From Mytilus trossulus (taxonomy: Eukaryota), in assembly GCF_036588685.1 (NCBI RefSeq), contig NC_086375.1:16306001-16370000 (forward strand): a stretch of 64,000 bases of DNA, in the 5' to 3' direction. Below the pieces are notes generated by a model. The model did not search any database. It saw only the letters and a list, made by a program, of their open reading frames with translations, and was not told where the DNA came from. Position numbers and translations under genes: made by a program. The stretch's first letter is position 1. Every line of letters starts with the position of its first letter. Below, piece by piece: positions 1,999 through 58,953 of the stretch.

Positions 1999-2991
1999 TG
2001 TTCAAGGGGAGACAAGTCTAAATAAATGCTTCCTTACATGATAAAATAGTACATTTTTGGAAATAGCTCCCCTTTTCATTAATGGTACCTACTCTTGCAA
2101 ACGGTTAACATTTCTAAGGCATTTTTCTTATATGTTTACCGTTGCCATAAACTTTTCCATAGCTTGTGACTGCGATGTTTACCGTAACCATACAAATTCT
2201 ATTAAAGGTTTACCGTAGCTCAACTAGTATAAGTATACTCTGCAGTTTACCGTTTCTTCGCACGCTGAAGGTTTACCACAACAAACAACGATATTAAATC
2301 ACTGTCTGAATGTTCAAGGGGATATTTGCTTCCAATTTATTCACTGAGTTTCGGATTAGAAATGAATTCCACAGAAGACAAAAAAAAAACTGTATGCTGA
2401 TACGGTAAACTGGACTATAAAGTATAATACTGGGTCCTTTTATTTTGGTATTGCATCTTTCTTTACCGAACCCTCATACAATTAGTTTACCTAGAAATAT
2501 CTTTGCTCTGAGCAGATAATATCAGCAACGTCATAGTGTTTGAGGAGAAGTTATCAGCGACCGTCACAAGACGTTGTCAGGCCTACGTTTGTCAAGCGCA
2601 AACCAGTTCAAAAGAGGGGGCGAATAGTGAAAGAACGAATACGAGAGTATAGGTGTTCAGCCGCTCGACGCAAGGTGAAGCTCTCTGGCTCGCGGCTGAT
2701 ATGTTTCCGATATCAATAGACAGAAACTCTGAAATCATTACCTATCAATATCCTTATCTTGTTTCTCAAACATTTAATACAAAGAAACGGGAAACTGAAA
2801 TGTTAAAGGATTGTTTGGTGATACGGTAAACTAGACTAAAAATAGTCTTAATCACTTAGCAGTGTCTCATTGATAAAACAAGAGGTATAAGATGTGCCAA
2901 TCCTTAAAGGAATGTAGACCAAACGTTAACATGTGTTTACCGTAACCGCATATCGTATTTGATCACGGTTTACCGTAACAACAGCTCAGAC

Positions 2992-3041
2992 AAAAAAAAA
3001 GGCATCCTTGAAATCACAACATATTGTGATTTCAAGGATGC
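2992..3041 (-). terminator. 18-bp perfect stem-loop plus U9 tract 12 nt downstream of the kinase stop (representative; present in each unit, damaged at copies 3, 5, 12, 22). Terminator function is unproven.
   Basis: GCATCCTTGAAATCACAA (3002-3019), loop CATA, TTGTGATTTCAAGGATGC (3024-3041). The A9 at 2992-3000 reads as a T-tract following the hairpin on the minus strand. Confidence 0.5.
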
Positions 3042-3053
3042 TTAATTATGTGT

Positions 3054-3791
3054 TTAAAACTGGCTCAAGGCAAGACGGACTGAGGTTGCATTAGCGCGTT
3101 TTTCAACAGAGGGTTCAAGCATAGAGGAGATGAGAGACTTTAACGTTTCGTTAGTGTTTTCTGGGAAAGAGAGGGTGTTGGAGATTTGAGATTGGACCAT
3201 AGAGGTAGCGTCACTATCGGAGAATGGGAAAGCTCCGAAGAGCATGACGTAGAGCATAACTCCCATACTCCACATATCGGCTTTCATGGCGTTGTGTTCC
3301 ATTCCCATAATAACTTCTGGGGCAGCGTATGGGAGGGTTCCACAAAATTCTTCAGATTCGGCAACAATATCGGACGACTTGGCAAATCCAAAGTCGGCCA
3401 ATTTGACACAACCATTAGACAACAAGACGTTTTCTAATTTAATGTCATTGTGGGCGATTCCAATTGAGTGGCAGTATTCGATTGCTTTGACAACCTGAGA
3501 GAAGAGAGAGAGGGTGGCTTCAACGGACATGAGACCGTTTTTCATTATGTATTCAAAGACATCTCCGAATTCAGCGAATTCCATCAAAACGAAGGCAAAT
3601 TCTTCGGCTTCGATGATTTCAATGGCTTCGACGATGTTTTCGTGTTTGAGGCTGAGAAAAGCTTCAAACTCAGTTGAGGTTTTGATGACTTTCTTTATTG
3701 CAACTTAACCGAATATTTCGCTAGAGGCAGAGAAAACTTCTTCAGTAAGAGCTACAACATTTGAGAGTCCACTGTTCATTAAAAATTCCAT
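3054..3791 (-). pseudogene. TSSK-like kinase copy 1, nonsense mutation K67*
   Basis: A single substitution at 3707 creates TAA (3705-3707) just before VAIK. The rest of the coding sequence matches the other copies. Confidence 0.85.
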
Positions 3792-4023
3792 TTTAAACTG
3801 GCGTGGATGTGATGTGATAAAAATACCAAATAGTGAAATGCAAGCCTTATATAGTAAATCGCCCGATATGGCCTCTTCCATGTCTTGATGTTCAAGGGGA
3901 GACAAGTCTAAATAAATGCTTCCTTACATGATAAAATAGTACATTTTTGGAAATAGCTCCCCTTTTCATTAATGGTACCTACTCTTGCAAACGGTTAACA
4001 TTTCTAAGGCATTTTTCTTATAT

Positions 4024-4866
4024 GTTTACCGTTGCCATAAACTTTTCCATAGCTTGTGACTGCGATGTTTACCGTAACCATACAAATTCTATTAAAGGTT
4101 TACCGTAGCTCAACTAGTATAAGTATACTCTGCAGTTTACCGTTTCTTCGCACGCTGAAGGTTTACCACAACAAACAACGATATTAAATCACTGTCTGAA
4201 TGTTCAAGGGGATATTTGCTTCCAATTTATTCACTGAGTTTCGGATTAGAAATGAATTCCACAGAAGACAAAAAAAAAACTGTATGCTGATACGGTAAAC
4301 TGGACTATAAAGTATAATACTGGGTCCTTTTATTTTGGTATTGCATCTTTCTTTACCGAACCCTCATACAATTAGTTTACCTAGAAATATCTTTGCTCTG
4401 AGCAGATAATATCAGCAACGTCATAGTGTTTGAGGAGAAGTTATCAGCGACCGTCACAAGACGTTGTCAGGCCTACGTTTGTCAAGCGCAAACCAGTTCA
4501 AAAGAGGGGGCGAATAGTGAAAGAACGAATACGAGAGTATAGGTGTTCAGCCGCTCGACGCAAGGTGAAGCTCTCTGGCTCGCGGCTGATATGTTTCCGA
4601 TATCAATAGACAGAAACTCTGAAATCATTACCTATCAATATCCTTATCTTGTTTCTCAAACATTTAATACAAAGAAACGGGAAACTGAAATGTTAAAGGA
4701 TTGTTTGGTGATACGGTAAACTAGACTAAAAATAGTCTTAATCACTTAGCAGTGTCTCATTGATAAAACAAGAGGTATAAGATGTGCCAATCCTTAAAGG
4801 AATGTAGACCAAACGTTAACATGTGTTTACCGTAACCGCATATCGTATTTGATCACGGTTTACCGT
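4024..4866. promoter_or_regulatory. Cluster of GTTTACCGT/ACGGTAAAC motifs in the spacer (representative unit)
   Basis: Exact copies at 4024, 4067, 4098, 4135, 4292(rc), 4713(rc), 4825 and 4858. Near-copies at 4161, 4351 and 4375. The regulatory role is inferred. Confidence 0.55.
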
Positions 4867-4943
4867 AACAACAGCTCAGACAAAAAAAAAGGCATCCTTG
4901 AAATCACAACATATTGTGATTTCAAGGATGCTTAATTATGTGT

Positions 4944-5681
4944 TTAAAACTGGCTCAAGGCAAGACGGACTGAGGTTGCATTAGCGCGTTTTTCAACAGA
5001 GGGTTCAAGCATAGAGGAGATGAGAGACTTTAACGTTTCGTTAGTGTTTTCTGGGAAAGAGAGGGTGTTGGAGATTTGAGATTGGACCATAGAGGTAGCG
5101 TCACTATCGGAGAATGGGAAAGCTCCGAAGAGCATGACGTAGAGCATAACTCCCATACTCCACATATCGGCTTTCATGGCGTTGTGTTCCATTCCCATAA
5201 TAACTTCTGGGGCAGCGTATGGGAGGGTTCCACAAAATTCTTCAGATTCGGCAACAATATCGGACGACTTGGCAAATCCAAAGTCGGCCAATTTGACACA
5301 ACCATTAGACAACAAGACGTTTTCTAATTTAATGTCATTGTGGGCGATTCCAATTGAGTGGCAGTATTCGATTGCTTTGACAACCTGAGAGAAGAGAGAG
5401 AGGGTGGCTTCAACGGACATGAGACCGTTTTTCATTATGTATTCAAAGACATCTCCGAATTCAGCGAATTCCATCAAAACGAAGGCAAATTCTTCGGCTT
5501 CGATGATTTCAATGGCTTCGACGATGTTTTCGTGTTTGAGGCTGAGAAAAGCTTCAAACTCAGTTGAGGTTTTGATGACTTTCTTTATTGCAACTTTACC
5601 GAATATTTCGCTAGAGGCAGAGAAAACTTCTTCAGTAAGAGCTACAACATTTGAGAGTCCACTGTTCATTAAAAATTCCAT
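4944..5681 (-). CDS. Intronless CAMK-group (TSSK-like) Ser/Thr protein kinase, copy 2, 245 aa
   Basis: Motifs VAIK, LKHENIV, MEFAEFGD, HNDIKLEN, DFG, FCGTLPYAAPE, DMWSMGV and subdomain XI Arg. The start is placed at TTTAAAATG (M39) downstream of the TATA box; the open frame extends upstream to ATG 5771 and TTG 5795. Confidence 0.9.
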   Translation of the reverse strand: MEFLMNSGLSNVVALTEEVFSASSEIFGKVAIKKVIKTSTEFEAFLSLKHENIVEAIEIIEAEEFAFVLMEFAEFGDVFEYIMKNGLMSVEATLSLFSQVVKAIEYCHSIGIAHNDIKLENVLLSNGCVKLADFGFAKSSDIVAESEEFCGTLPYAAPEVIMGMEHNAMKADMWSMGVMLYVMLFGAFPFSDSDATSMVQSQISNTLSFPENTNETLKSLISSMLEPSVEKRANATSVRLALSQF

Positions 5682-5735
5682 TTTAAACTGGCGTGGATGT
5701 GATGTGATAAAGATACCAAATAGTGAAATGCAAGC

Positions 5736-5743
5736 CTTATATA
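5736..5743 (-). promoter_or_regulatory. TATA box of the kinase gene (representative; present in copies 1-29)
   Basis: TATATAAG on the minus strand, 62 nt upstream of the M39 ATG. It is retained as TATATAAA in the diverged relic (~1454-1462). Confidence 0.65.
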
Positions 5744-6835
5744 GTAAATCGCCCGATATGGCCTCTTCCATGTCTTGATGTTCAAGGGGAGACAAGTCTA
5801 AATAAATGCTTCCTTACATGATAAAATAGTACATTTTTGGAAATAGCTCCCCTTTTCATTAATGGTACCTACTCTTGCAAACGGTTAACATTTCTAAGGC
5901 ATTTTTCTTATATGTTTACCGTTGCCATAAACTTTTCCATAGCTTGTGACTGCGATGTTTACCGTAACCATACAAATTCTATTAAAGGTTTACCGTAGCT
6001 CAACTAGTATAAGTATACTCTGCAGTTTACCGTTTCTTCGCACGCTGAAGGTTTACCACAACAAACAACGATATTAAATCACTGTCTGAATGTTCAAGGG
6101 GATATTTGCTTCCAATTTATTCAATGAGTTTCGGATTAGAAATGAATTCCACAGAAGACAAAAAAAAAAAACTGTATGCTGATACGGTAAACTGGACTAT
6201 AAAGTATAATACTGGGTCCTTTTATTTTGGTATTGCATCTTTCTTTACCGTACCCTCATACAATTAGTTTACCTAGAAATGTCTTTGCTCTGAGCAGATA
6301 ATATCAGCAACGTCATAGTGTTTGAGGAGAAGTTATCAGCGACCGTCACAAGACGTTGTCAGGCCTACGTTTGTCAAGCGCAAACCAGTTCAAAAGAGGG
6401 GGCGAATAGTGAAAGAACGAATACGAGAGTATAGGTGTTCAGCCGCTCGACGCAAGGTGAAGCTCTCTGGCTCGCGGCTGATATGTTTCCGATATCAATA
6501 GACAGAAACTCTGAAATCATTACCTATCAATATCCTTATCTTGTTTCTCAAACATTTAATACAAAGAAACGGGAAACTGAAATGTTAAAGGATTGTTTGG
6601 TGATACGGTAAACTAGACTAAAAATAGTATTAATCACTTAGCAGTGTCTCATTGATAAAACAAGAGGTATAAGACGTGCCAATCCTTAAAGGAATGTAGA
6701 CCAAACGTTAACATGTGTTTACCGTAACCGCATATCGTATTTGATCACGGTTTACCGTAACAACAGCTCAGACAAAAAAAAAGGCATCCTTGAAATAACA
6801 ACATATTGTGATTTCAAGGATGCTTAATTATGTGT

Positions 6836-7573
6836 TTAAAACTGGCTCAAGGCAAGACGGACTGAGGTTGCATTAGCGCGTTTTTCAACAGAGGGTTCAA
6901 GCATAGAGGAGATGAGAGACTTTAACGTTTCGTTAGTGTTTTCTGGGAAAGAGAGGGTGTTGGAGATTTGAGATTGGACCATAGAGGTAGCGTCACTATC
7001 GGAGAATGGGAAAGCTCCGAAGAGCATGACGTAGAGCATAACTCCCATACTCCACATATCGGCTTTCATGGCGTTGTGTTCCATTCCCATAATAACTTCT
7101 GGGGCAGCGTATGGGAGGGTTCCACAAAATTCTTCAGATTCGGCAACAATATCGGACGACTTGGCAAATCCAAAGTCGGCCAATTTGACACAACCATTAG
7201 ACAACAAGACGTTTTCTAATTTAATGTCATTGTGGGCGATTCCAATTGAGTGGCAGTATTCGATTGCTTTGACAACCTGAGAGAAGAGAGAGAGGGTGGC
7301 TTCAACGGACATGAGACCGTTTTTCATTATGTATTCAAAGACATCTCCGAATTCAGCGAATTCCATCAAAACGAAGGCAAATTCTTCGGCTTCGATGATT
7401 TCAATGGCTTCGACGATGTTTTCGTGTTTGAGGCTGAGAAAAGCTTCAAACTCAGTTGAGGTTTTGATGACTTTCTTTATTGCAACTTTACCGAATATTT
7501 CGCTAGAGGCAGAGAAAACTTCTTCAGTAAGAGCTACAACATTTGAGAGTCCACTGTTCATTAAAAATTCCAT
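6836..7573 (-). CDS. TSSK-like kinase copy 3
   Basis: Same protein as copy 2 (T274 type). Confidence 0.9.
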   Translation of the reverse strand: MEFLMNSGLSNVVALTEEVFSASSEIFGKVAIKKVIKTSTEFEAFLSLKHENIVEAIEIIEAEEFAFVLMEFAEFGDVFEYIMKNGLMSVEATLSLFSQVVKAIEYCHSIGIAHNDIKLENVLLSNGCVKLADFGFAKSSDIVAESEEFCGTLPYAAPEVIMGMEHNAMKADMWSMGVMLYVMLFGAFPFSDSDATSMVQSQISNTLSFPENTNETLKSLISSMLEPSVEKRANATSVRLALSQF

Positions 7574-8704
7574 TTTAAACTGGCGTGGATGTGATGTGAT
7601 AAAGATACCAAATAGTGAAATGCAAGCCTTATATAGTAAATCGCCCGATATGGCCTCTTCCATGTCTTGATGTTCAAGGGGAGACAAGTCTAAATAAATG
7701 CTTCCTTACATGATAAAATAGTACATTTTTGGAAATAGCTCCCCTTTTCATTAATGGTACCTACTCTTGCAAACGGTTAACATTTCTAAGGCATTTTTCT
7801 TATATGTTTACCGTTGCCATAAACTTTTCCATAGCTTGTGACTGCGATGTTTACCGTAACCATACAAATTCTATTAAAGGTTTACCGTAGCTCAACTAGT
7901 ATAAGTATACTCTGCAGTTTACCGTTTCTTCGCACGCTGAAGGTTTACCACAACAAACAACGATATTAAATCACTGTCTGAATGTTCAAGGGGATATTTG
8001 CTTCCAATTTATTCAATGAGTTTCGGATTAGAAATGAATTCCACAGAAGACAAAAAAAAAACTGTATGCTGATACGGTAAACTGGACTATAAAGTATAAT
8101 ACTGGGTCCTTTTATTTTGGTATTGCATCTTTCTTTACCGTACCCTCATACAATAAGTTTACCTAGAAATGTCTTTGCTCTGAGCAGATAATAAGGAGAA
8201 GTTATCAGCGACCGTCACAAGACGTTGTCAGGCCTACGTTTGTCAAGCGCAAACCAGTTCAAAAGAGGGGGCGAATAGTGAAAGAACGAATACGAGAGTA
8301 TAGGTGTTCAGCCGCTCGACGCAAGGTGAAGCTCTCTGGCTCGCGGCTGATATGTTTCCGATATCAATAGACAGAAACTCTGAAATCATTACCTATCAAT
8401 ATCCTTATCTTGTTTCTCAAACATTTAATACAAAGAAACGGGAAACTGAAATGTTAAAGGATTGTTTGGTGATACGGTAAACTAGACTAAAAATAGTATT
8501 AATCACTTAGAAGTGTCTCATTGATAAAACAAGAGGTATAAGATGTGCCAATCCTTAAAGGAATGTAGACCAAACGTTAACATGTGTTTACCGTAACCGC
8601 ATATCGTATTTGATCACGGTTTACCGTAACAACAGCTCAGACAAAAAAAAAGGCATCCTTGAAATCACAACATATTGTGATTTCAAGGATGCTTAATTAT
8701 GTGT

Positions 8705-9430
8705 TTAAAACTGGCTCAAGGCAAGACGGACTGAGGTTGCATTAGCGCGTTTTTCAACAGAGGGTTCAAGCATAGAGGAGATGAGAGACTTTAACGTTTC
8801 GTTAGTGTTTTCTGGGAAAGAGAGGGTGTTGGAGATTTGAGATTGGACCATAGAGGTAGCGTCACTATCGGAGAATGGGAAAGCTCCGAAGAGCATGACG
8901 TAGAGCATAACTCCCATACTCCACATATCGGCTTTCATGGCGTTGTGTTCCATTCCCATAATAACTTCTGGGGCAGCGTATGGGAGGGTTCCACAAAATT
9001 CTTCAGATTCGGCAACAATATCGGACGACTTGGCAAATCCAAAGTCGGCCAATTTGACACAACCATTAGACAACAAGACGTTTTCTAATTTAATGTCATT
9101 GTGGGCGATTCCAATTGAGTGGCAGTATTCGATTGCTTTGACAACCTGAGAGATGAGAGAGAGGGTGGCTTCAACGGACATGAGACCGTTTTTCATTATG
9201 TATTCAAAGACATCTCCGAATTCAGCGAATTCCATCAAAACGAAGGCAAATTCTTCGGCTTCGATGATTTCAATGGCTTCGACGATGTTTTCGTGTTTGA
9301 GGCTGAGAAAAGCTTCAAACTCAGTTGAGGTTTTGATGACTTTCTTTATTGCAACTTTACCGAATATTTCGCTAGAGGCAGAGAAAACTTCTTCAGTAAG
9401 AGCTACAACATTTGAGAGTCCACTGTTCAT
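8705..9430 (-). CDS. TSSK-like kinase copy 4 (M39 ATG>ATA, F135I)
   Basis: Intact frame. The presumed start is mutated, so the next ATG (M43) is used for the coordinates. Confidence 0.8.
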   Translation of the reverse strand: MNSGLSNVVALTEEVFSASSEIFGKVAIKKVIKTSTEFEAFLSLKHENIVEAIEIIEAEEFAFVLMEFAEFGDVFEYIMKNGLMSVEATLSLISQVVKAIEYCHSIGIAHNDIKLENVLLSNGCVKLADFGFAKSSDIVAESEEFCGTLPYAAPEVIMGMEHNAMKADMWSMGVMLYVMLFGAFPFSDSDATSMVQSQISNTLSFPENTNETLKSLISSMLEPSVEKRANATSVRLALSQF

Positions 9431-10578
9431 TAAAAATTCTATTTTAAACTGGCGTGGATGTGATGTGATAAAGATACCAAATAATGAAATGCAAGCCTTA
9501 TATAGTAAATCGCCCGATATGGCCTCTTCCATGTCTTGATGTTCAAGGGGAGACAAGTCTAAATAAATGCTTCCTTACATGATAAAATAGTACATTTTTG
9601 GAAATAGCTCCCCTTTTCATTAATGGTACCTACTCTTGCAAACGGTTAACATTTCTAAGGCATTTTTCTTATATGTTTACCGTTGCCATAAACTTTTCCA
9701 TAGCTTGTGACTGCGATGTTTACCGTAACCATACAAATTCTATTAAAGGTTTACCGTAGCTCAACTAGTATAAGTATACTCTGCAGTTTACCGTTTCTTC
9801 GCACGCTGAAGGTTTACCACAACAAACAACGATATTAAATCACTGTCTGAATGTTCAAGGGGATATTTGCTTCCAATTTATTCAATGAGTTTCGGATTAG
9901 AAATGAATTCCACAGAAGACAAAAAAAAACTGTATGCTGATACGGTAAACTGGACTATAAAGTATAATACTGGGTCCTTTTATTTTGGTATTGCATCTTT
10001 CTTTACCGTACCCTCATACAATTAGTTTACCTAGAAATGTCTTTGCTCTGAGCAGATAATATCAGCAACGTCATAGTGTTTGAGGAGAAGTTATCAGCGA
10101 CCGTCACAAGACGTTGTCAGGCCTACGTTTGTCAAGCGCAAACCAGTTCAAAAGAGGGGGCGAATAGTGAAAGAACGAATACGAGAGTATAGGTGTTCAG
10201 CCGCTCGACGCAAGGTGAAGCTCTCTGGCTCGCGGCTGATATGTTTCCGATATCAATAGACAGAAACTCTGAAATCATTACCTATCAATATCCTTATCTT
10301 GTTTCTCAAACATTTAATACAAAGAAACGGGAAACTGAAATGTTAAAGGATTGTTTGGTGATACGGTAAACTAGACTAAAAATAGTATTAATCACTTAGC
10401 AGTGTCTCATTGATAAAACAAGAGGTATAAGATGTGCCAATCCTTAAAGGAATGTAGACCAAACGTTAACATGTGTTTACCGTAACCGCATATCGTATTT
10501 GATCACGGTTTACCGTAACAACAGCTCAGACAAAAAAAAAGGCATCCTTGAAATCACAACATATTCTTAATTATGTGT

Positions 10579-11316
10579 TTAAAACTGGCTCAAGGCAAGA
10601 CGGACTGAGGTTGCATTAGCGCGTTTTTCAACAGAGGGTTCAAGCATAGAGGAGATGAGAGACTTTAACGTTTCGTTAGTGTTTTCTGGGAAAGAGAGGG
10701 TGTTGGAGATTTGAGATTGGACCATAGAGGTAGCGTCACTATCGGAGAATGGGAAAGCTCCGAAGAGCATGACGTAGAGCATAACTCCCATACTCCACAT
10801 ATCGGCTTTCATGGCGTTGTGTTCCATTCCCATAATAACTTCTGGGGCAGCGTATGGGAGGGTTCCACAAAATTCTTCAGATTCGGCAACAATATCGGAC
10901 GACTTGGCAAATCCAAAGTCGGCCAATTTGACACAACCATTAGACAACAAGACGTTTTCTAATTTAATGTCATTGTGGGCGATTCCAATTGAGTGGCAGT
11001 ATACGATTGCTTTGACAACCTGAGAGAAGAGAGAGAGGGTGGCTTCAACGGACATGAGACCGTTTTTCATTATGTATTCAAAGACATCTCCGAATTCAGC
11101 GAATTCCATCAAAACGAAGGCAAATTCTTCGGCTTCGATGATTTCAATGGCTTCGACGATGTTTTCGTGTTTGAGGCTGAGAAAAGCTTCAAACTCAGTT
11201 GAGGTTTTGATGACTTTCTTTATTGCAACTTTACCGAATATTTCGCTAGAGGCAGAGAAAACTTCTTCAGTAAGAGCTACAACATTTGAGAGTCCACTGT
11301 TCATTAAAAATTCCAT
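10579..11316 (-). CDS. TSSK-like kinase copy 5 (E143V; 3' hairpin arm deleted)
   Basis: Intact ORF, T274 type. Confidence 0.88.
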   Translation of the reverse strand: MEFLMNSGLSNVVALTEEVFSASSEIFGKVAIKKVIKTSTEFEAFLSLKHENIVEAIEIIEAEEFAFVLMEFAEFGDVFEYIMKNGLMSVEATLSLFSQVVKAIVYCHSIGIAHNDIKLENVLLSNGCVKLADFGFAKSSDIVAESEEFCGTLPYAAPEVIMGMEHNAMKADMWSMGVMLYVMLFGAFPFSDSDATSMVQSQISNTLSFPENTNETLKSLISSMLEPSVEKRANATSVRLALSQF

Positions 11317-48321: not shown

Positions 48322-49059
48322 TTAAAACTGGCTCAAGGCAAGACGGACTGAGCTTGCATTAGCGCGTTTTTCAACAGAGGGTTCAAGCATAGAGGAGATG
48401 AGAGACTTTAACGTTTCGTTAGTGTTTTCTGGGAAAGAGAGGGTGTTGGAGATTTGAGATTGGACCATAGAGGTAGCGTCACTATCGGAGAATGGGAAAG
48501 CTCCGAAGAGCATGACGTAGAGCATAACTCCCATACTCCACATATCGGCTTTCATGGCGTTGTGTTCCATTCCCATAATAACTTCTGGGGCAGCGTATGG
48601 GAGGGTTCCACAAAATTCTTCAGATTCGGCAACAATATCGGACGACTTGGCAAATCCAAAGTCGGCCAATTTGACACAACCATTAGACAACAAGACGTTT
48701 TCTAATTTAATGTCATTGTGGGCGATTCCAATTGAGTGGCAGTATTCGATTGCTTTGACAACCTGAGAGAAGAGAGAGAGGGTGGCTTCAACGGACATGA
48801 GACCGTTTTTCATTATGTATTCAAAGACATCTCCGAATTCAGCGAATTCCATCAAAACGAAGGCAAATTCTTCGGCTTCGATGATTTCAATGGCTTCGAC
48901 GATGTTTTCGTGTTTGAGGCTGAGAAAAGCTTCAAACTCAGTTGAGGTTTTGATGACTTTCTTTATTGCAACTTTACCGAATATTTCGCTAGAGGCAGAG
49001 AAAACTTCTTCAGTAAGAGCTACAACATTTGAGAGTCCACTGTTCATTAAAAATTCCAT
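48322..49059 (-). CDS. TSSK-like kinase copy 25
   Basis: Intact ORF, consensus. Confidence 0.9.
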   Translation of the reverse strand: MEFLMNSGLSNVVALTEEVFSASSEIFGKVAIKKVIKTSTEFEAFLSLKHENIVEAIEIIEAEEFAFVLMEFAEFGDVFEYIMKNGLMSVEATLSLFSQVVKAIEYCHSIGIAHNDIKLENVLLSNGCVKLADFGFAKSSDIVAESEEFCGTLPYAAPEVIMGMEHNAMKADMWSMGVMLYVMLFGAFPFSDSDATSMVQSQISNTLSFPENTNETLKSLISSMLEPSVEKRANASSVRLALSQF

Positions 49060-50212: not shown

Positions 50213-50950
50213 TTAAAACTGGCTCAAGGCAAGACGGACTGAGCTTGCATTAGCGCGTTTTTCAACAGAGGGTTCAAGCATAGAGGAGATGAGAGACTTT
50301 AACGTTTCGTTAGTGTTTTCTGGGAAAGAGAGGGTGTTGGAGATTTGAGATTGGACCATAGAGGTAGCGTCACTATCGGAGAATGGGAAAGCTCCGAAGA
50401 GCATGACGTAGAGCATAACTCCCATACTCCACATATCGGCTTTCATGGCGTTGTGTTCCATTCCCATAATAACTTCTGGGGCAGCGTATGGGAGGGTTCC
50501 ACAAAATTCTTCAGATTCGGCAACAATATCGGACGACTTGGCAAATCCAAAGTCGGCCAATTTGACACAACCATTAGACAACAAGACGTTTTCTAATTTA
50601 ATGTCATTGTGGGCGATTCCAATTGAGTGGCAGTATTCGATTGCTTTGACAACCTGAGAGAAGAGAGAGAGGGTGGCTTCAACGGACATGAGACCGTTTT
50701 TCATTATGTATTCAAAGACATCTCCGAATTCAGCGAATTCCATCAAAACGAAGGCAAATTCTTCGGCTTCGATGATTTCAATGGCTTCGACGATGTTTTC
50801 GTGTTTGAGGCTGAGAAAAGCTTCAAACTCAGTTGAGGTTTTGATGACTTTCTTTATTGCAACTTTACCGAATATTTCGCTAGAGGCAGAGAAAACTTCT
50901 TCAGTAAGAGCTACAACATTTGAGAGTCCACTGTTCATTAAAAATTCCAT
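50213..50950 (-). CDS. TSSK-like kinase copy 26
   Basis: Intact ORF, consensus. Confidence 0.9.
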   Translation of the reverse strand: MEFLMNSGLSNVVALTEEVFSASSEIFGKVAIKKVIKTSTEFEAFLSLKHENIVEAIEIIEAEEFAFVLMEFAEFGDVFEYIMKNGLMSVEATLSLFSQVVKAIEYCHSIGIAHNDIKLENVLLSNGCVKLADFGFAKSSDIVAESEEFCGTLPYAAPEVIMGMEHNAMKADMWSMGVMLYVMLFGAFPFSDSDATSMVQSQISNTLSFPENTNETLKSLISSMLEPSVEKRANASSVRLALSQF

Positions 50951-52102
50951 TTTAAACTGGCGTGGATGTGATGTGATAAAGATACCAAATAGTGAAATGC
51001 AAGCCTTATATAGTAAATCGCCCGATATGGCCTCTTCCATGTCTTGATGTTCAAGGGGAGACAAGTCTAAATAAATGCTTCCTTACATGATAAAATAGTA
51101 CATTTTTGGAAATAGCTCCCCTTTTCATTAATGGTACCTACTCTTGCAAACGGTTAACATTTCTAAGGCATTTTTCTTATATGTTTACCGTTGCCATAAA
51201 CTTTTCCATAGCTTGTGACTGCGATGTTTACCGTAACCATACAAATTCTATTAAAGGTTTACCGTAGCTCAACTAGTATAAGTATACTCTGCAGTTTATC
51301 GTTTCTTCGCACGCTGAAGGTTTACCACAACAAACAACGATATTAAATCACTGTCTGAATGTTCAAGGGGATATTTGCTTCCAATTTATTCAATGAGTTT
51401 CGGATTAGAAATGAATTCCACAGAAGACAAAAAAAAACTGTATGCTGATACGGTAAACTGGACTATAAAGTATAATACTGGGTCCTTTTATTTTGGTATT
51501 GCATCTTTCTTTACCGTACCCTCATACAATTAGTTTACCTAGAAATGTCTTTGCTCTGAGCAGATAATATCAGCAACGTCATAGTGTTTGAGGAGAAGTT
51601 ATCAGCGACCGTCACAAGACGTTGTCAGGCCTACGTTTGTCAAGCGCAAACCAGTTCAAAAGAGGGGGCGAATAGTGAAAGAACGAATACGAGAGTATAG
51701 GTGTTCAGCCGCTCGACGCAAGGTGAAGCTCTCTGGCTCGCGGCTGATATGTTTCCGATATCAATAGACAGAAACTATGAAATCATTACCTATCAATATC
51801 CTTATCTTGTTTCTCAAACATTTAATACAAAGAAACGGGAAACTGAAATGTTAAAGGATTGTTTGGTGATACGGTAAACTAGACTAAAAATAGTCTTAAT
51901 CACTTAGCAGTGTCTCATTGATAAAACAAGAGGTATAAGATGTGCCAATCCTTGAAGGAATGTAGACCAAACGTTAACATGTGTTTACCGTAACCGCATA
52001 TCGTATTTGATCACGGTTTACCGTAACAACAGCTCAGACAAAAAAAAAAAGCATCCTTGAAATCACAACATATTGTGATTTCAAGGATGCTTAATTATGT
52101 GT

Positions 52103-52840
52103 TTAAAACTGGCTCAAGGCAAGACGGACTGAGCTTGCATTAGCGCGTTTTTCAACAGAGGGTTCAAGCATAGAGGAGATGAGAGACTTTAACGTTTCGT
52201 TAGTGTTTTCTGGGAAAGAGAGGGTGTTGGAGATTTGAGATTGGACCATAGAGGTAGCGTCACTATCGGAGAATGGGAAAGCTCCGAAGAGCATGACGTA
52301 GAGCATAACTCCCATACTCCACATATCGGCTTTCATGGCGTTGTGTTCCATTCCCATAATAACTTCTGGGGCAGCGTATGGGAGGGTTCCACAAAATTCT
52401 TCAGATTCGGCAACAATATCGGACGACTTGGCAAATCCAAAGTCGGCCAATTTGACACAACCATTAGACAACAAGACGTTTTCTAATTTAATGTCATTGT
52501 GGGCGATTCCAATTGAGTGGCAGTATTCGATTGCTTTGACAACCTGAGAGAAGAGAGAGAGGGTGGCTTCAACGGACATGAGACCGTTTTTCATTATGTA
52601 TTCAAAGACATCTCCGAATTCAGCGAATTCCATCAAAACGAAGGCAAATTCTTCGGCTTCGATGATTTCAATGGCTTCGACGATGTTTTCGTGTTTGAGG
52701 CTGAGAAAAGCTTCAAACTCAGTTGAGGTTTTGATGACTTTCTTTATTGCAACTTTACCGAATATTTCGCTAGAGGCAGAGAAAACTTCTTCAGTAAGAG
52801 CTACAACATTTGAGAGTCCACTGTTCATTAAAAATTCCAT
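52103..52840 (-). CDS. TSSK-like kinase copy 27
   Basis: Intact ORF, consensus. Confidence 0.9.
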   Translation of the reverse strand: MEFLMNSGLSNVVALTEEVFSASSEIFGKVAIKKVIKTSTEFEAFLSLKHENIVEAIEIIEAEEFAFVLMEFAEFGDVFEYIMKNGLMSVEATLSLFSQVVKAIEYCHSIGIAHNDIKLENVLLSNGCVKLADFGFAKSSDIVAESEEFCGTLPYAAPEVIMGMEHNAMKADMWSMGVMLYVMLFGAFPFSDSDATSMVQSQISNTLSFPENTNETLKSLISSMLEPSVEKRANASSVRLALSQF

Positions 52841-53992
52841 TTTAAACTGGCGTGGATGTGATGTGATAAAGATACCAAATAGTGAAATGCAAGCCTTATA
52901 TAGTAAATCGCCCGATATGGCCTCTTCCATGTCTTGATGTTCAAGGGGAGACAAGTCTAAATAAATGCTTCCTTACATGATAAAATAGTACATTTTTGGA
53001 AATAGCTCCCCTTTTCATTAATGGTACCTACTCTTGCAAACGGTTAACATTTCTAAGGCATTTTTCTTATATGTTTACCGTTGCCATAAACTTTTCCATA
53101 GCTTGTGACTGCGATGTTTACCGTAACCATACAAATTCTATTAAAGGTTTACCGTAGCTCAACTAGTATAAGTATACTCTGCAGTTTACCGTTTCTTCGC
53201 ACGCTGAAGGTTTACCACAACAAACAACGATATTAAATCACTGTCTGAATGTTCAAGGGGATATTTGCTTCCAATTTATTCAATGAGTTTCGGATTAGAA
53301 ATGAATTCCACAGAAGACAAAAAAAAAACTGTATGCTGATACGGTAAACTGGACTATAAAGTATAATACTGGGTCCTTTTATTTTGGTATTGCATCTTTC
53401 TTTACCGTACCCTCATACAATTAGTTTACCTAGAAATGTCTTTGCTCTGAGCAGATAATATCAGCAACGTCATAGTGTTTGAGGAGAAGTTATCAGCGAC
53501 CGTCACAAGACGTTGTCAGGCCTACGTTTGTCAAGCGCAAACCAGTTCAAAAGAGGGGGCGAATAGTGAAAGAACGAATACGAGAGTATAGGTGTTCAGC
53601 CGCTCGACGCAAGGTGAAGCTCTCTGGCTCGCGGCTGATATGTTTCCGATATCAATAGACAGAAACTATGAAATCATTACCTATCAATATCCTTATCTTG
53701 TTTCTCAAACATTTAATACAAAGAAACGTGAAACTGAAATGTTAAAGGATTGTTTGGTGATACGGTAAACTAGACTAAAAATAGTCTTAATCACTTAGCA
53801 GTGTCTCATTGATAAAACAAGAGGTATAAGATGTGCCAATCCTTGAAGGAATGTAGACCAAACGTTAACATGTGTTTACCGTAACCGCATATCGTATTTG
53901 ATCACGGTTTACCGTAACAACAGCTCAGACAAAAAAAAAGGCATCCTTGAAATCACAACATATTGTGATTTCAAGGATGCTTAATTATGTGT

Positions 53993-54730
53993 TTAAAACT
54001 GGCTCAAGGCAAGACGGACTGAGCTTGCATTAGCGCGTTTTTCAACAGAGGGTTCAAGCATAGAGGAGATGAGAGACTTTAACGTTTCGTTAGTGTTTTC
54101 TGGGAAAGAGAGGGTGTTGGAGATTTGAGATTGGACCATAGAGGTAGCGTCACTATCGGAGAATGGGAAAGCTCCGAAGAGCATGACGTAGAGCATAACT
54201 CCCATACTCCACATATCGGCTTTCATGGCGTTGTGTTCCATTCCCATAATAACTTCTGGGGCAGCGTATGGGAGGGTTCCACAAAATTCTTCAGATTCGG
54301 CAACAATATCGGACGACTTGGCAAATCCAAAGTCGGCCAATTTGACACAACCATTAGACAACAAGACGTTTTCTAATTTAATGTCATTGTGGGCGATTCC
54401 AATTGAGTGGCAGTATTCGATTGCTTTGACAACCTGAGAGAAGAGAGAGAGGGTGGCTTCAACGGACATGAGACCGTTTTTCATTATGTATTCAAAGACA
54501 TCTCCGAATTCAGCGAATTCCATCAAAACGAAGGCAAATTCTTCGGCTTCGATGATTTCAATGGCTTCGACGATGTTTTCGTGTTTGAGGCTGAGAAAAG
54601 CTTCAAACTCAGTTGAGGTTTTGATGACTTTCTTTATTGCAACTTTACCGAATATTTCGCTAGAGGCAGAGAAAACTTCTTCAGTAAGAGCTACAACATT
54701 TGAGAGTCCACTGTTCATTAAAAATTCCAT
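53993..54730 (-). CDS. TSSK-like kinase copy 28
   Basis: Intact ORF, consensus. Confidence 0.9.
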   Translation of the reverse strand: MEFLMNSGLSNVVALTEEVFSASSEIFGKVAIKKVIKTSTEFEAFLSLKHENIVEAIEIIEAEEFAFVLMEFAEFGDVFEYIMKNGLMSVEATLSLFSQVVKAIEYCHSIGIAHNDIKLENVLLSNGCVKLADFGFAKSSDIVAESEEFCGTLPYAAPEVIMGMEHNAMKADMWSMGVMLYVMLFGAFPFSDSDATSMVQSQISNTLSFPENTNETLKSLISSMLEPSVEKRANASSVRLALSQF

Positions 54731-55605
54731 TTTAAACTGGCGTGGATGTGATGTGATAAAGATACCAAATAGTGAAATGCAAGCCTTATATAGTAAATCG
54801 CCCGATATGGCCTCTTCCATGTCTTGATGTTCAAGGGGAGACAAGTCTAAATAAATGCTTCCTTACATGATAAAATAGTACATTTTTGGAAATAGCTCCC
54901 CTTTTCATTAATGGTACCTACTCTTGCAAACGGTTAACATTTCTAAGGCATTTTTCTTATATGTTTACCGTTGCCATAAACTTTTCCATAGCTTGTGACT
55001 GCGATGTTTACCGTAACCATACAAATTCTATTAAAGGTTTACCGTAGCTCAACTAGTATAAGTATACTCTGCAGTTTACCGTTTCTTCGCACGCTGAAGG
55101 TTTACCACAACAAACAACGATATTAAATCACTGTCTGAATGTTCAAGGGGATATTTGCTTCCAATTTATTCAATGAGTTTCGGATTAGAAATGAATTCCA
55201 CAGAAGACAAAAAAAAAACTGTATGCTGATACGGGAAACTGGACTATAAAGTATAATACTGGGTCCTTTTATTTTGGTATTGCATCTTTCTTTACCGTAC
55301 CCTCATACAATTAGTTTACCTAGAAATGTCTTTGCTCTGAGCAGATAATATCAGCAACGTCATAGTGTTTGAGGAGAAGTTATCAGCGACCGTCACAAGA
55401 CGTTGTCAGGCCTACGTTTGTCAAGCGCAAACCAGTTCAAAAGAGGGGGCGAATAGTGAAAGAACGAATACGAGAGTATAGGTGTTCAGCCGCTCGACGC
55501 AAGGTGAAGCTCTCTGGCTCGCGGCTGATATGTTTCCGATATCAATAGACAGAAACTATGAAATCATTACCTATCAATATCCTTATCTTGTTTCTCAAAC
55601 ATTTA

Positions 55606-56261
55606 GGGTGCTATAAACAGTTTCGTACTAAAAACTAGGGGTATTTCCCCAGTGAGATTTACATACTGATGGAATTCCCTGCTATTTATATACCACTAAA
55701 TGAAAAAGTTGATTGTTTTTTATGTTCAATGTGAAAAACATATATTGAAGTTCAATTAAAATGCCACTTTTGTCAAGATTTAAAAAAAAAAAAATGTTTT
55801 TGTGACTTCCTACTATATGGGAGGCAACTCCATAAACAGCTGATTTTCACCTGTTGCAAAAAGCACTTTGATTTGTCAGGTAAGATAGCTCCTTTCGGAG
55901 CAGGCGAACGTAGGCTGAAACTACATTTTCTTAAATCAGCCGGACAAGCTCTTCGAAATGCATATTATAAGAAATCTCAAATATATGCACAGGTTACTGA
56001 TCCATGTGTCCAAAGGTGGTCTGTTTTTAAGGTTTTTTAGGGGGAAAATGCCTAATTTCCAGCTGATAACTTGTACCAATTTGCATGTTTAAACAAGAGA
56101 TGTTGGATTTTTTTTTATTTATTCAGACAGTTCATAGAATTATCTTTCCATTGATGTATAGATATCTATATAACTATGAATATCTGACTTCTGCATGATG
56201 GGTCCACTATTACATGCCCTGTTACAGAATGACGTCGCGTAAAAAACTGTTGATTGCACCC
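55606..56261. mobile_element. Non-autonomous DNA transposon (PIF/Harbinger, Tourist-like MITE), 656 bp
   Basis: TIRs GGGTGCTATAAACAGTTT and AAACTGTTGATTGCACCC (16/18 match). TTA target duplication at 55603-55605 and 56262-56264. The other units show the empty site CATTTAATAC, and this unit is longer by 659 bp. Confidence 0.9.
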
Positions 56262-56541
56262 TTAATACAAAGAAACGGGAAACTGAAATATTAAAGGATT
56301 GTTTGGTGATACGGTAAACTAGACTAAAAATAGTCTTAATCACTTAGCAGTGTCTCATTGATAAAACAAGAGGTATAAGATGTGCCAATCCTTGAAGGAA
56401 TGTAGACCAAACGTTAACATGTGTTTACCGTAACCGCATATCGTATTTGATCACGGTTTACCGTAACAACAGCTCAGACAAAAAAAAAGGCATCCTTGAA
56501 ATCACAACATATTGTGATTTCAAGGATGCTTAATTATGTGT

Positions 56542-57279
56542 TTAAAACTGGCTCAAGGCAAGACGGACTGAGCTTGCATTAGCGCGTTTTTCAACAGAGG
56601 GTTCAAGCATAGAGGAGATGAGAGACTTTAACGTTTCGTTAGTGTTTTCTGGGAAAGAGAGGGTGTTGGAGATTTGAGATTGGACCATAGAGGTAGCGTC
56701 ACTATCGGAGAATGGGAAAGCTCCGAAGAGCATGACGTAGAGCATAACTCCCATACTCCACATATCGGCTTTCATGGCGTTGTGTTCCATTCCCATAATA
56801 ACTTCTGGGGCAGCGTATGGGAGGGTTCCACAAAATTCTTCAGATTCGCCAACAATATCGGACGACTTGGCAAATCCAAAGTCGGCCAATTTGACACAAC
56901 CATTAGACAACAAGACGTTTTCTAATTTAATGTCATTGTGGGCGATTCCAATTGAGTGGCAGTATTTGATTGCTTTGACAACCTGAGAGAAGAGAGAGAG
57001 GGTGGCTTCAACGGACATGAGACCGTTTTTCATTATGTATTCAAAGACATCTCCGAATTCAGCGAATTCCATCAAAACGAAGGCAAATTCTTCGGCTTCG
57101 ATGATTTCAATGGCTTCGACGATGTTTTCGTGTTTGAGGCTGAGAAAAGCTTCAAACTCAGTTGAGGTTTTGATGACTTTCTTTATTGCAACTTTAACGA
57201 ATATTTCGCTAGAGGCAGAGAAAACTTCTTCAGTAAGAGCTACAACATTTGAGAGTCCACTGTTCATTAAAAATTCCAT
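56542..57279 (-). CDS. TSSK-like kinase copy 29 (G66V, E143K, A182G)
   Basis: Intact ORF with three private missense changes. Confidence 0.87.
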   Translation of the reverse strand: MEFLMNSGLSNVVALTEEVFSASSEIFVKVAIKKVIKTSTEFEAFLSLKHENIVEAIEIIEAEEFAFVLMEFAEFGDVFEYIMKNGLMSVEATLSLFSQVVKAIKYCHSIGIAHNDIKLENVLLSNGCVKLADFGFAKSSDIVGESEEFCGTLPYAAPEVIMGMEHNAMKADMWSMGVMLYVMLFGAFPFSDSDATSMVQSQISNTLSFPENTNETLKSLISSMLEPSVEKRANASSVRLALSQF

Positions 57280-58431
57280 TTTAAACTGGCGTGGATGTGA
57301 TGTGATAAAGATACCAAATAGTGAAATGCAAGCCTTATATAGTAAATCGCCCGATATGGCCTCTTCCATGTCTTGATGTTCAAGGGGAGACAAGTCTAAA
57401 TAAATGCTTCCTTACATGATAAAATAGTACATTTTTGGAAATAGCTCCCCTTTTCATTAATGGTACCTACTCTTGCAAACGGTTAACATTTCTAAGGCAT
57501 TTTTCTTATATGTTTACCGTTGCCATAAACTTTTCCATAGCTTGTGACTGCGATGTTTACCGTAACCATACAAATTCTATTAAAGGTTTACCGTAGCTCA
57601 ACTAGTATAAGTATACTCTGCAGTTTACCGTTTCTTCGCACGCTGAAGGTTTACCACAACAAACAACGATATTAAATCACTGTCTGAATGTTCAAGGGGA
57701 TATTTGCTTCCAATTTATTCAATGAGTTTCGGATTAGAAATGAATTCCACAGAAGACAAAAAAAAAACTGTATGCTGATACGGGAAACTGGACTATAAAG
57801 TATAATACTGGGTCCTTTTATTTTGGTATTGCATCTTTCTTTACCGTACCCTCATACAATTAGTTTACCTAGAAATGTCTTTGCTCTGAGCAGATAATAT
57901 CAGCAACGTCATAGTGTTTGAGGAGAAGTTATCAGCGACCGTCACAAGACGTTGTCAGGCCTACGTTTGTCAAGCGCAAACCAGTTCAAAAGAGGGGGCG
58001 AATAGTGAAAGAACGAATACGAGAGTATAGGTGTTCAGCCGCTCGACGCAAGGTGAAGCTCTCTGGCTCGCGGCTGATATGTTTCCGATATCAATAGACA
58101 GAAACTATGAAATCATTACCTATCAATATCCTTATCTTGTTTCTCAAACATTTAATACAAAGAAACGGGAAACTGAAATATTAAAGGATTGTTTGGTGAT
58201 ACGGTAAACTAGACTAAAAATAGTCTTAATCACTTAGCAGTGTCTCATTGATAAAACAAGAGGTATAAGATGTGCCAATCCTTGAAGGAATGTAGACCAA
58301 ACGTTAACATGTGTTTACCGTAACCGCATATCGTATTTGATCACGGTTTACCGTAACAACAGCTCAGACAAAAAAAAAGGCATCCTTGAAATCACAACAT
58401 ATTGTGATTTCAAGGATGCTTAATTATGTGT

Positions 58432-58953
58432 TTAAAACTGGCTCAAGGCAAGACGGACTGAGCTTGCATTAGCGCGTTTTTCAACAGAGGGTTCAAGCAT
58501 AGAGGAGATGAGAGACTTTAACGTTTCGTTAGTGTTTTCTGGGAAAGAGAGGGTGTTGGAGATTTGAGATTGGACCATAGAGGTAGCGTCACTATCGGAG
58601 AATGGGAAAGCTCCGAAGAGCATGACGTAGAGCATAACTCCCATACTCCACATATCGGCTTTCATGGCGTTGTGTTCCATTCCCATAATAACTTCTGGGG
58701 CAGCGTATGGGAGGGTTCCACAAAATTCTTCAGATTCGGCAACAATATCGGACGACTTGGCAAATCCAAAGTCGGCCAATTTGACACAACCATTAGACAA
58801 CAAGACGTTTTCTAATTTAATGTCATTGTGGGCGATTCCAATTGAGTGGCAGTATTCGATTGCTTTGACAACCTGAGAGAAGAGAGAGAGGGTGGCTTCA
58901 ACGGACAAATTCTCCAACCGGCAACTTCTTCGGTTTCGATAATTTCAATGGCT
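58432..58953 (-). pseudogene. TSSK-like kinase copy 30, 5'-truncated (C-lobe only)
   Basis: Matches consensus to 58907. A short diverged N-lobe remnant follows (58920-58953), then unrelated sequence. No promoter, start ATG or VAIK. Confidence 0.88.

What the first reader, a model, noticed from the sequence alone, without database searches (positions are those of the whole stretch)
1999..58953. 30-copy homogenised tandem array of a self-contained TSSK-like kinase gene cassette
Seen: a ~1.89-kb unit containing a motif-rich spacer, TATA box, intronless 245-aa kinase ORF and 3' hairpin is repeated head-to-tail 30 times, and 28 copies keep an open frame. Established: this architecture is typical of histone, rDNA and snRNA genes and is rare for signalling kinases. 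Known amplified germline examples (Drosophila Stellate, the mouse Smok family with the t-complex responder, mouse Slx/Sly ampliconic genes) are linked to sperm function or segregation distortion, and TSSK genes are mostly intronless and expressed in spermatids. Inference: this may be a dosage-amplified male-germline kinase system, possibly involved in gamete competition or drive. Function cannot be shown from sequence alone.
Basis: partly seen in the sequence, partly recalled or inferred. Interest (0 to 1): 0.9.

Follow-up and report, generated by a model that had tools for sequence, protein, structure and literature searches.

The report
Tandem array of mussel kinase genes
A mussel (Mytilus trossulus) chromosome carries about 30 near-identical head-to-tail copies of a small intronless gene for an unusual TSSK-related protein kinase; it is one of three such arrays, the gene is kept by selection, and where it is expressed is not known.

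Summary
It has 29 full units of about 1.89 kb, a 5'-truncated copy and a degenerate relic, and spans window 1930-58953. Units are 99.7% identical, and shared variants reveal recent multi-unit duplications.

Each unit carries:
- a 245-aa intronless kinase ORF;
- a TATA box 62 nt upstream of the ATG;
- eight ACGGTAAAC sites;
- an 18-bp hairpin plus T-run directly after the stop codon.

The genome is Mytilus trossulus. Two sister arrays lie on other chromosomes (C4 and C1); the scan had already noted both on other DNA (s1-826609, s1-820514).

Between arrays, the coding sequence, proximal promoter, motif sites and hairpin are conserved while the central spacer has decayed. dN/dS is 0.14-0.18, so the gene is functional.

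The protein keeps all catalytic residues. It has no glycine in the ATP loop, HND in place of HRD, and Glu at the T-loop phospho-site. It forms a mytilid-specific clade grouping with TSSK-named kinases (96/91), but no vertebrate TSSK was available.

RefSeq already annotates the copies as 'TSSK3-like'; I found no paper on the arrays.

Verdict: a real array and a new variant of a known kind, of moderate interest.

The parts
1930..58953 (-). Whole tandem array: 29 full units of about 1.89 kb plus one 5'-truncated copy at the high-coordinate (upstream) edge.
   Evidence: Units are 99.72% identical on average.
4944..5681 (-). Example coding sequence (unit 28): 245-aa intronless kinase ORF including the stop codon. 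Equivalent ORFs recur every ~1.89 kb up to 56542-57279.
   Evidence: Pfam Pkinase 2.4e-51. ORF table. K33, E41, D116, N121 and D133 are invariant across the family.
5735..5743 (-). TATA box (TATATAAGG), 62 nt upstream of the ATG. Conserved in the C4 and C1 arrays.
   Evidence: In an RNA library the coding contig ends 43 nt upstream of the ATG of unit 27.
5914..6033 (-). Cluster of four ACGGTAAAC sites on the gene strand, 233-352 nt upstream of the ATG. Candidate enhancer or transcription-factor sites.
   Evidence: 238 exact sites in the window against 0.42 expected. The sites are conserved in the C1 array while the surrounding spacer diverged. The triple cluster is nearly confined to the three arrays genome-wide.
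6717..6758 (-). Two further conserved ACGGTAAAC sites just downstream of the preceding gene's hairpin and T-run.
4892..4931 (-). Perfect 18-bp-stem hairpin with a 4-nt loop, starting 13 nt after the stop codon.
   Evidence: RNA fold -27.9 kcal/mol, z -8.1. C1 has a longer version at -39.4 kcal/mol. The stem is intact in other species, which carry a 2-nt loop deletion.
4882..4890 (-). Run of 9 T directly after the hairpin.
   Evidence: Conserved in all three arrays.
58432..58917 (-). 5'-truncated copy at the array edge (residues 85-245 only, no promoter).
3054..3791 (-). Last full copy, disabled by a TAA at codon 29 (window 3705-3707).
40794..41513 (-). Copy with an in-frame 18-bp deletion (239 aa; removes FGKVAI just before the catalytic Lys).
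55606..56261 (.). 656-bp insertion in the spacer of the first full unit. It has terminal inverted repeats (GGGTGC...GCACCC) and a TAA target duplication, so it looks like a MITE.
   Evidence: It explains the single 2549-bp unit.
948..1871 (-). Relic of an older unit (promoter plus N-terminal coding fragments, 68-85% identical, with stops) beyond the array's low edge.

Best explanation
This is a genuine, recently homogenised tandem array of functional genes in Mytilus trossulus. It is one of three arrays, on contigs C3, C4 and C1, which together hold about 55 units and nearly 50 intact ORFs.

Each 1.7-1.9 kb unit looks like an autonomous Pol II transcription unit. It has upstream ACGGTAAAC sites, a TATA box, a 245-aa intronless ORF and a conserved 3' hairpin plus T-run.

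The product is a bare kinase domain of a mytilid-specific, fast-evolved branch related to the TSSK kinases. It keeps the catalytic Lys/Glu/Asp/Asn/Asp. It has lost the glycines of the ATP loop (ALTEEV), is a non-RD kinase (HND), and has Glu where relatives carry the activating T-loop threonine. It is most likely a constitutively 'on' kinase that needs no upstream activator; this is inferred.

Unequal crossing-over and gene conversion keep the copies within an array alike (shown by variant patterns). Selection acts on the family rather than on single copies (shown by dN/dS).

The likely purpose of the amplification is a large burst of transcript in one cell type. By analogy with TSSKs this would most probably be male germ cells; that step is inferred and untested.
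For: Array and unit structure.

Higher-order duplications: units 11-14 match units 20-23, and units 16-19 match units 23-26.

Sister arrays: C4:20.12-20.15 Mb (97% aa) and C1:26.00-26.03 Mb (92% aa). Their unique flanks are not homologous.

Selection: dS is 0.26 and dN/dS 0.14-0.18 between the C3/C4 and C1 arrays. Within the array there are 11 nonsynonymous and 1 synonymous variants, as expected for young redundant copies.

Footprinting between arrays: coding sequence ~93%, proximal 350 bp 71-89%, TATA box, ACGGTAAAC sites and hairpin/T-run conserved, central spacer unalignable.

Family conservation: 69-81% identical 245-aa relatives exist in other unnamed samples, with all catalytic residues invariant. 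One 17-kb contig holds three copies.

Other Mytilus species: contigs from organisms B and D close on themselves after a 1741-bp unit. M. edulis and M. trossulus each list several RefSeq accessions for one identical protein.

Fold and family: Pkinase 2.4e-51; the AF2 model has a complete N-lobe topology; the closest folds are AMPK, SIK, MELK and MARK; the family shares a clade with TSSK-named proteins at 96/91.

T-loop: Glu aligns with the MARK4 T-loop Thr.

Not a transposon: the spacer occurs nowhere else in the genome, and there is no Rfam or tRNA gene in the unit.
Against: No direct evidence of tissue or level of expression. The reads call returned only assembled contigs. Three 'RNA?' runs hold the whole unit including the spacer, which fits DNA carry-over as well as read-through transcription.

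In the one certain RNA library, coding contigs are deeper than spacer contigs (14-17 against 3-4). Coding k-mers are also shared by more genomic copies, so this is weak evidence.

An ATP loop with no glycine and two Glu residues could mean poor ATP binding, that is, a pseudokinase. The AF2 model is only moderate (pLDDT 74).

The copy number of 30 rests on the assembly; read depth was not measured.

TSSK relatedness rests on automatically named proteins and a small tree.
Confidence: 0.6

Rival explanations
1. The array is a functional amplified gene, but the burst of expression is not in the male germline. It could be in oocytes or early cleavage embryos, as with early histone arrays or DUX4-type arrays at zygotic genome activation, or in a somatic cell type.
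For: Short intronless TATA-driven units in homogenised arrays are typical of genes needed in large amounts quickly (established knowledge). The TSSK link is only coarse. The nearest canonical relatives (P0149 group) resemble generic CAMKL kinases such as CIPK and AMPK. The 3' hairpin directly after the stop codon recalls non-polyadenylated histone-type messages in position, though not in sequence.
Against: The nearest named animal proteins are all TSSK-named. The Atlas neighbours are TSSK3 and TSSK6. No expression data point to embryos either.
Confidence: 0.2
2. The array is a selfish or conflict-driven ampliconic system in the manner of mouse Smok/Tcr or Drosophila Stellate. Copy number would be escalated by gamete competition, segregation distortion or an arms race with a suppressor.
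For: Several independently seeded arrays lie on three chromosomes, with very recent expansion. The protein looks deregulated and constitutively active. The stem branch of the family is long (1.48 substitutions per site).
Against: This is ordinary purifying selection, not an arms-race signature. No antisense or suppressor-like copies were found: all units have one orientation and no inverted copies turned up. No transmission or small-RNA data exist.
Confidence: 0.1
3. The array is a satellite-like amplification of a dead or pseudokinase gene with no present function for the animal. The open frames would survive only because the copies are young.
For: Within-array variants are 11 nonsynonymous to 1 synonymous. 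Four of the 29 full units carry lesions: a nonsense codon, an in-frame deletion and two lost start codons. The glycine-rich loop is missing.
Against: Between-array dS is 0.26 with dN/dS 0.14. The promoter, motif sites and hairpin are conserved while the mid-spacer is scrambled. The ORF is intact in relatives down to 69% identity.
Confidence: 0.07
4. The array is an assembly artefact: a few copies inflated into 30.
For: Depth was not measured here. Repeats this homogeneous are hard to assemble.
Against: Units carry a structured pattern of private and shared variants, a MITE in one unit, and 18-22 bp length variants. Three separate arrays exist in the assembly. Contigs from other samples close on one unit, so the tandem arrangement is real. 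The exact number remains unverified.
Confidence: 0.03

Closest known systems
TSSK family (testis-specific serine/threonine kinases; TSSK3 and TSSK6 are ~270-aa kinase-domain-only proteins from intronless genes)
   Same: Short, intronless, kinase domain only. Shares a clade at 96/91 with TSSK-named Mytilus and arthropod proteins. Atlas neighbours are TSSK3 and TSSK6. RefSeq names the copies 'TSSK3-like'.
   Different: No GxGxxG loop, HND instead of HRD, and Glu instead of the T-loop Thr. The stem branch is long. About 55 copies sit in macrosatellite-like arrays, whereas the canonical Mytilus TSSK3-like genes were each matched at one place in the genome. Testis expression is not shown.
Mouse Smok / Tcr (sperm motility kinases, a multicopy intronless MARK-related family; the t-complex responder)
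   Same: Multicopy, intronless kinase of the CAMKL group. The best solved-structure matches of the mussel protein are MARK3/4.
   Different: From general knowledge, Smok proteins are about twice as long with a C-terminal tail, and are not arranged as a 99.7%-identical head-to-tail array. No drive, linkage or sperm data exist for the mussel genes. No Smok sequence could be put in the tree.
Tandemly repeated multigene families under concerted evolution (histone, 5S rDNA and snRNA arrays, including the Mytilus histone arrays)
   Same: Constant-period head-to-tail units, each with its own promoter and 3' element. Identity within an array is far higher than between arrays. The spacer diverges while functional parts are kept.
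   Different: The product is a signalling enzyme, not a bulk structural protein or RNA. The 3' hairpin has an 18-bp stem and matches no Rfam family, so it is not the histone stem-loop.
D4Z4/DUX4-type macrosatellites and Drosophila Stellate arrays (intronless ORF inside each repeat unit)
   Same: Kilobase-scale units each holding one intronless ORF. Several arrays lie on different chromosomes. Homogenisation is recent.
   Different: Different protein classes. Those arrays are largely silenced or conflict-related, whereas here long-term purifying selection on the ORF is clear and no silencing or small-RNA data exist.

Membership tests
Eukaryotic protein kinase (catalytically competent) | Beta3 Lys, alphaC Glu, catalytic-loop Asp and Asn, and DFG Asp are present | tested here: met
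   K33, E41, D116, N121 and D133 are invariant in 18 family and relative sequences. Pkinase 2.4e-51.
Eukaryotic protein kinase (catalytically competent) | Glycine-rich GxGxxG ATP-binding loop | tested here: not met
   The beta1-beta2 loop reads ALTEEV with no glycine, and this is conserved across the family. The nearest relatives, the P0024/P0149 group, have GEGSFGKV.
Eukaryotic protein kinase (catalytically competent) | Phosphotransfer activity | not testable with these tools
   Needs a biochemical assay.
TSSK family | Groups with TSSK1-6 in a kinase phylogeny | tested here: inconclusive
   The family shares a clade at 96/91 with TSSK-named Mytilus and arthropod proteins, apart from the AMPK/SNF1/CIPK/CaMKI rows. 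A first tree left this unresolved. No vertebrate TSSK and no full-length MARK, NUAK or Smok kinase domain was available. The best PDB hits are MARK3/4 at 136 bits against TSSK6 at 118 bits.
TSSK family | Testis-specific, post-meiotic expression | not testable with these tools
TSSK family | RD kinase activated by T-loop phosphorylation | tested here: not met
   HND instead of HRD, and Glu at the position of the MARK4 T-loop Thr.
Tandem multigene family under concerted evolution | Head-to-tail units of constant period, each with a complete gene | tested here: met
   29 units with a period of 1890-1892.
Tandem multigene family under concerted evolution | Identity within an array far exceeds identity between arrays | tested here: met
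   Units differ by 0.28% within C3. Between C3 and C4 the spacer is 91% identical. Between C3 and C1 dS is 0.26 and the mid-spacer is unalignable.
Drive or ampliconic conflict genes (Smok/Tcr, Stellate, Slx/Sly) | Transmission distortion, or a matching suppressor or small-RNA system | not testable with these tools
   No crosses or small-RNA data. No inverted or antisense copies were seen.
Transposon-borne or satellite repeat | Dispersed copies of the unit or spacer elsewhere in the genome | tested here: not met
   The spacer matches only the C3 and C4 arrays. The protein matches at high identity only in the three arrays.

The most novel reading that the evidence does not exclude
The roughly 55-copy family may encode a constitutively active, activator-independent sperm kinase whose copy number is driven by intragenomic or sperm-level conflict in mussels. 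It could conceivably be tied to the unusual paternal mitochondrial transmission and sex-ratio biology of Mytilus, making it a molluscan counterpart of mouse Smok/Tcr.
Probability: 0.07. Interest if true: 0.85.

Novelty: new variant of a known kind. Interest (0 to 1): 0.5.

Why it matters
Signalling kinases are almost never organised like histone or rDNA genes. This family has about 55 self-contained units in three homogenised arrays and clear purifying selection. It also has an unusual catalytic core: no glycine loop, non-RD, and a phosphomimetic T-loop.

It offers three things:
- a clean natural case of concerted evolution acting on an enzyme gene;
- a compact promoter (a repeated 9-mer plus a TATA box) and a conserved 3' hairpin that can be tested directly;
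- a candidate high-dosage germline or early-embryo kinase in commercially and ecologically important mussels.

If copy number varies among individuals, sexes or species, it could serve as a marker or a player in reproductive isolation within the Mytilus species complex.

Tried and rejected
- Tandem Repeats Finder: blind to this period (longest period 500).
I could not fetch DNA of the 69-81% relatives, nor check the 1.0-1.35 kb contigs for poly(A) tails.
- Metagenome scan with the family alignment: returned only kinases at most 39% identical and no mytilid DNA.
- Reads: only Logan contigs were served, so no depth, no transcript starts or ends, and no tissue information.
- Rfam and tRNA scans of the unit: only sub-threshold hairpin look-alikes. 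The hairpin is not a histone stem-loop or a known RNA family.
- Pol III reading of 'TATA ... T-run': rejected, because the sense strand has a T5 run at codons 2-4.
- Helitron or other transposon origin: rejected, because there are no dispersed copies.
- The 275-aa upstream-ATG models in M. edulis and M. galloprovincialis RefSeq: rejected as the true ORF. The extension runs through the TATA box, and its ATG and frame are lost in the C1 array.
- Ciocan et al. 2011 M. edulis TSTK1 (PMC3144882): probably a different gene. Only the forward primer was searched, and it is absent from the window.
- ACGGTAAAC as a genome-wide regulon mark: triple clusters occur almost only in these arrays. No transcription factor could be assigned; the forkhead GTAAACA and Myb AACGG resemblances come from memory only.
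- Literature searches found no description of these arrays.


Full report
**1. What is there**

The window has 39% G+C between about 2 kb and 59 kb and 31-33% outside. Thirty ORFs of at least 150 aa lie on the minus strand at a spacing of about 1.89 kb. Tandem Repeats Finder reports nothing only because its longest period is 500.

Anchoring on the 18 bases at the start codon gives 29 units. The period is 1890-1892, with two units of 1870/1871 and one of 2549.

State of the copies:
- 26 units have an intact 245-aa ORF.
- 2 units have ATG changed to ATA (at 22640 and 9442).
- 1 unit has an in-frame 18-bp deletion (40794-41513).
- 1 unit, the last, has a TAA at codon 29 (3705-3707).
- A thirtieth copy at the upstream edge (58432-58917) lacks the promoter and the first 84 codons.

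The 2549-bp unit holds a 656-bp insertion with inverted termini and a TAA target duplication, which looks like a MITE. Beyond the low edge, at 948-1871, lies a degenerate older copy, 68-85% identical and with stops.

**2. Homogeneity and turnover**

The 28 unit-to-unit alignments differ by 0.28% on average and 0.7% at most. The distance matrix shows blocks that are identical at a fixed offset: units 11-14 match units 20-23, and units 16-19 match units 23-26. The array therefore grew recently by multi-unit duplication, as unequal crossing-over produces.

Within the array the coding variants are 11 nonsynonymous to 1 synonymous. That is what young redundant copies show before selection has acted.

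**3. The genome and the sister arrays**

The window is C3:16306001-16370000 of a 1.30-Gb assembly. RefSeq proteins XP_063435550 and XP_063423468, and seven other kinases, match letter for letter.

The same protein search finds two more arrays:
- C4:20.12-20.15 Mb: about 10 units, 97% aa identity, period 1889.
- C1:26.00-26.03 Mb: about 16 units, 92% aa identity, period 1711-1727.

The scan's first readers had already noted both on other DNA (s1-826609 and s1-820514). The unique flanks of the three loci share nothing but unit-derived sequence. The spacer occurs nowhere else in the genome. These are three separately seeded arrays, not a segmental duplication or a transposon family.

**4. Which parts of the unit are functional**

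I aligned one unit from each array.

| Part of the unit | C3 against C1 |
|---|---|
| Coding sequence | about 93% identical |
| Hairpin, T-run and following TTGTTACGGTAAACC | conserved |
| Central ~700 bp of spacer | unalignable (39-55%) |
| Last ~350 bp before the ATG | 71-89% identical |

The conserved proximal region keeps four ACGGTAAAC sites, a TTAACCGTTTGCAAGAGTAGGTACCATTAATGAAAAGGGGAG block and TATATAAGG.

Nei-Gojobori estimates give dS 0.26 and dN/dS 0.14 (C3 against C1) and 0.18 (C4 against C1). The ORF, its promoter and its 3' element are thus under purifying selection while the rest of the spacer drifts.

The in-frame upstream ATG used by some 275-aa RefSeq models runs through the TATA box. 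Its ATG and frame are lost in C1, so the 245-aa ORF is the real one.

ACGGTAAAC occurs 238 times in the window against 0.42 expected, which is eight per unit. Genome-wide, triple clusters of it are almost confined to the three arrays.

The hairpin is a perfect 18-bp stem at -27.9 kcal/mol, z about -8. The C1 version is longer, at -39.4 kcal/mol, and includes a G-U pair. No Rfam family or tRNA lies in the unit.

**5. The protein**

Pfam Pkinase matches at 2.4e-51. The best solved relatives are MARK3/4, MELK, SIK3 and AMPK, with TSSK6 a little lower. Foldseek on a moderate AF2 model (pLDDT 74) gives the same CAMKL kinases.

The model has the full five-strand N-lobe. However, the loop between strands 1 and 2, where kinases carry GxGxxG, reads ALTEEV. 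This is conserved through the family.

HRD is HND in Mytilus and HCD or HSD in the relatives. The T-loop threonine of MARK4 aligns with Glu. K33, E41, D116, N121 and D133 are invariant.

I read this as a bare, activator-independent kinase with an atypical nucleotide pocket. A pseudokinase cannot be excluded.

**6. Family and distribution**

The large protein search finds three tiers:
- 95-99% copies in M. edulis, M. galloprovincialis and M. coruscus, named TSSK, STK22 or 'TSSK3-like';
- a series of 245-aa proteins, 69-81% identical, from unnamed assemblies;
- then a gap down to 44% and below.

One 17-kb contig carries three of the 69-81% proteins, so tandem organisation is probably shared.

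A first tree left the position of the family open. I then dropped the long rows and added CIPK, AMPK, SNF1, CaMKI and MOS as outgroups. In that tree three groups form one clade at 96/91:
- the array family (itself 100/100, stem 1.48 substitutions per site);
- a small group of unnamed canonical kinases (P0149 and relatives);
- the TSSK-named clade (Mytilus TSSK3-like proteins of 292 and 356 aa, and arthropod TSSKs).

The Atlas also puts TSSK3 and TSSK6 clusters first. However, P0149's own nearest named relatives are plant CIPKs and AMPK. No vertebrate TSSK and no full-length MARK or Smok kinase domain could be included. 'TSSK-related' is supported only at this coarse level.

**7. Expression**

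Twenty-three public runs hold the unit or part of it. All were served as assembled contigs.
- Organism A has a 1919-nt contig covering exactly one unit plus overlap.
- Organisms B and D have contigs that 'go back 1741'. This shows a tandem 1741-bp unit in other species, about 97% identical, with the hairpin stem intact. These may be DNA carry-over.
- In one certain RNA library (a fish-gut metatranscriptome) contigs cover 6821-7616. That is the coding region plus 43 nt of leader, ending 11 nt after the TATA box. Their depth is 14-17, against 3-4 for spacer contigs.

This fits an mRNA starting at the TATA-directed site but is weak evidence. Tissue, sex and stage are unknown.

The only published Mytilus testis kinase I found, TSTK1 (PMC3144882), may be another gene. 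Its forward primer is absent from the window, and only that primer was searched.

**8. Explanation and rivals**

Best explanation (0.6): a functional, dosage-amplified, self-contained gene cassette. Unequal exchange keeps it homogeneous and selection at the family level keeps it working. It encodes a constitutively configured TSSK-related kinase. The target tissue is most likely male germ cells, by analogy only.

Rivals:
- Burst expression in eggs, early embryos or a somatic cell type (0.2).
- A conflict or drive system of the Smok or Stellate type (0.1). The low long-term dN/dS and the absence of antisense copies argue against it, but it is untested.
- A dead satellite-like amplification (0.07). 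Footprinting and dN/dS contradict it.
- An assembly artefact (0.03).

**9. Novelty**

The genes are already annotated in RefSeq as 'TSSK3-like'. Seven literature searches found no account of their array organisation or odd catalytic core. Tandem multigene families and ampliconic germline genes are known kinds. A signalling kinase arranged as three homogenised arrays with its own repeated promoter motif and 3' hairpin is a new variant of that kind. Interest is moderate (0.5), and higher if germline or conflict roles are shown.

**10. Limits**

Read depth, transcript ends and tissue specificity could not be measured.

Noticed in passing
window 55606-56261: 656-bp insertion with inverted termini (GGGTGCAATCAACAG... 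/ ...CTGTTTATAGCACCC) and a TAA target-site duplication, in the spacer of one unit only. It looks like a PIF/Harbinger-type MITE that arrived after the last homogenisation.
   Followed up: partly
window 948-1871: Degenerate older copy of the unit (promoter plus N-terminal coding fragments, 68-85% identical, with stops) just outside the homogeneous array. The locus is therefore older than the present array.
   Followed up: partly
L098:6677-7969 (G000:C3:16302677-16303969, minus strand), about 2 kb before the window: Intronless 431-aa ORF with no Pfam match, on the same strand as the array. No counterpart lies beside the C4 or C1 arrays.
   Followed up: partly
G000:C7:55259872-55260405 and C7:55287690-55288220 (L102, L103): Two small intronless kinases about 28 kb apart; L103 (268 aa) matches the RefSeq protein named 'NUAK family SNF1-like kinase 2', L102 was not looked up. 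They sit on a very long branch (2.12) and grouped next to the array family in the first tree. This may be another fast-evolving orphan kinase pair.
   Followed up: partly
P0024, P0149, P0216, P0217, P0218 (unnamed ENA/Logan contigs of 1-2 kb): A small group of 250-270-aa kinases with canonical GEGSFGKV and HRD motifs. They are the nearest relatives of the array family (39-46% identity). Their source organisms are unknown.
   Followed up: partly
genome-wide: The control pattern (the ACGGTAAAC triple read backwards, CAAATGGCA...) has 60 forward and 84 reverse matches in the genome, as many as the real pattern. Some other repeat family must carry that word.
   Followed up: no
G000:C1:22016805-22016861 and C2:40656407-40656477: Two short tandem repeats (24- and 31-bp periods) that each contain ACGGTAAAC once per period. 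They are the only triple-motif hits listed outside the kinase arrays; 22 further matches were not listed.
   Followed up: no
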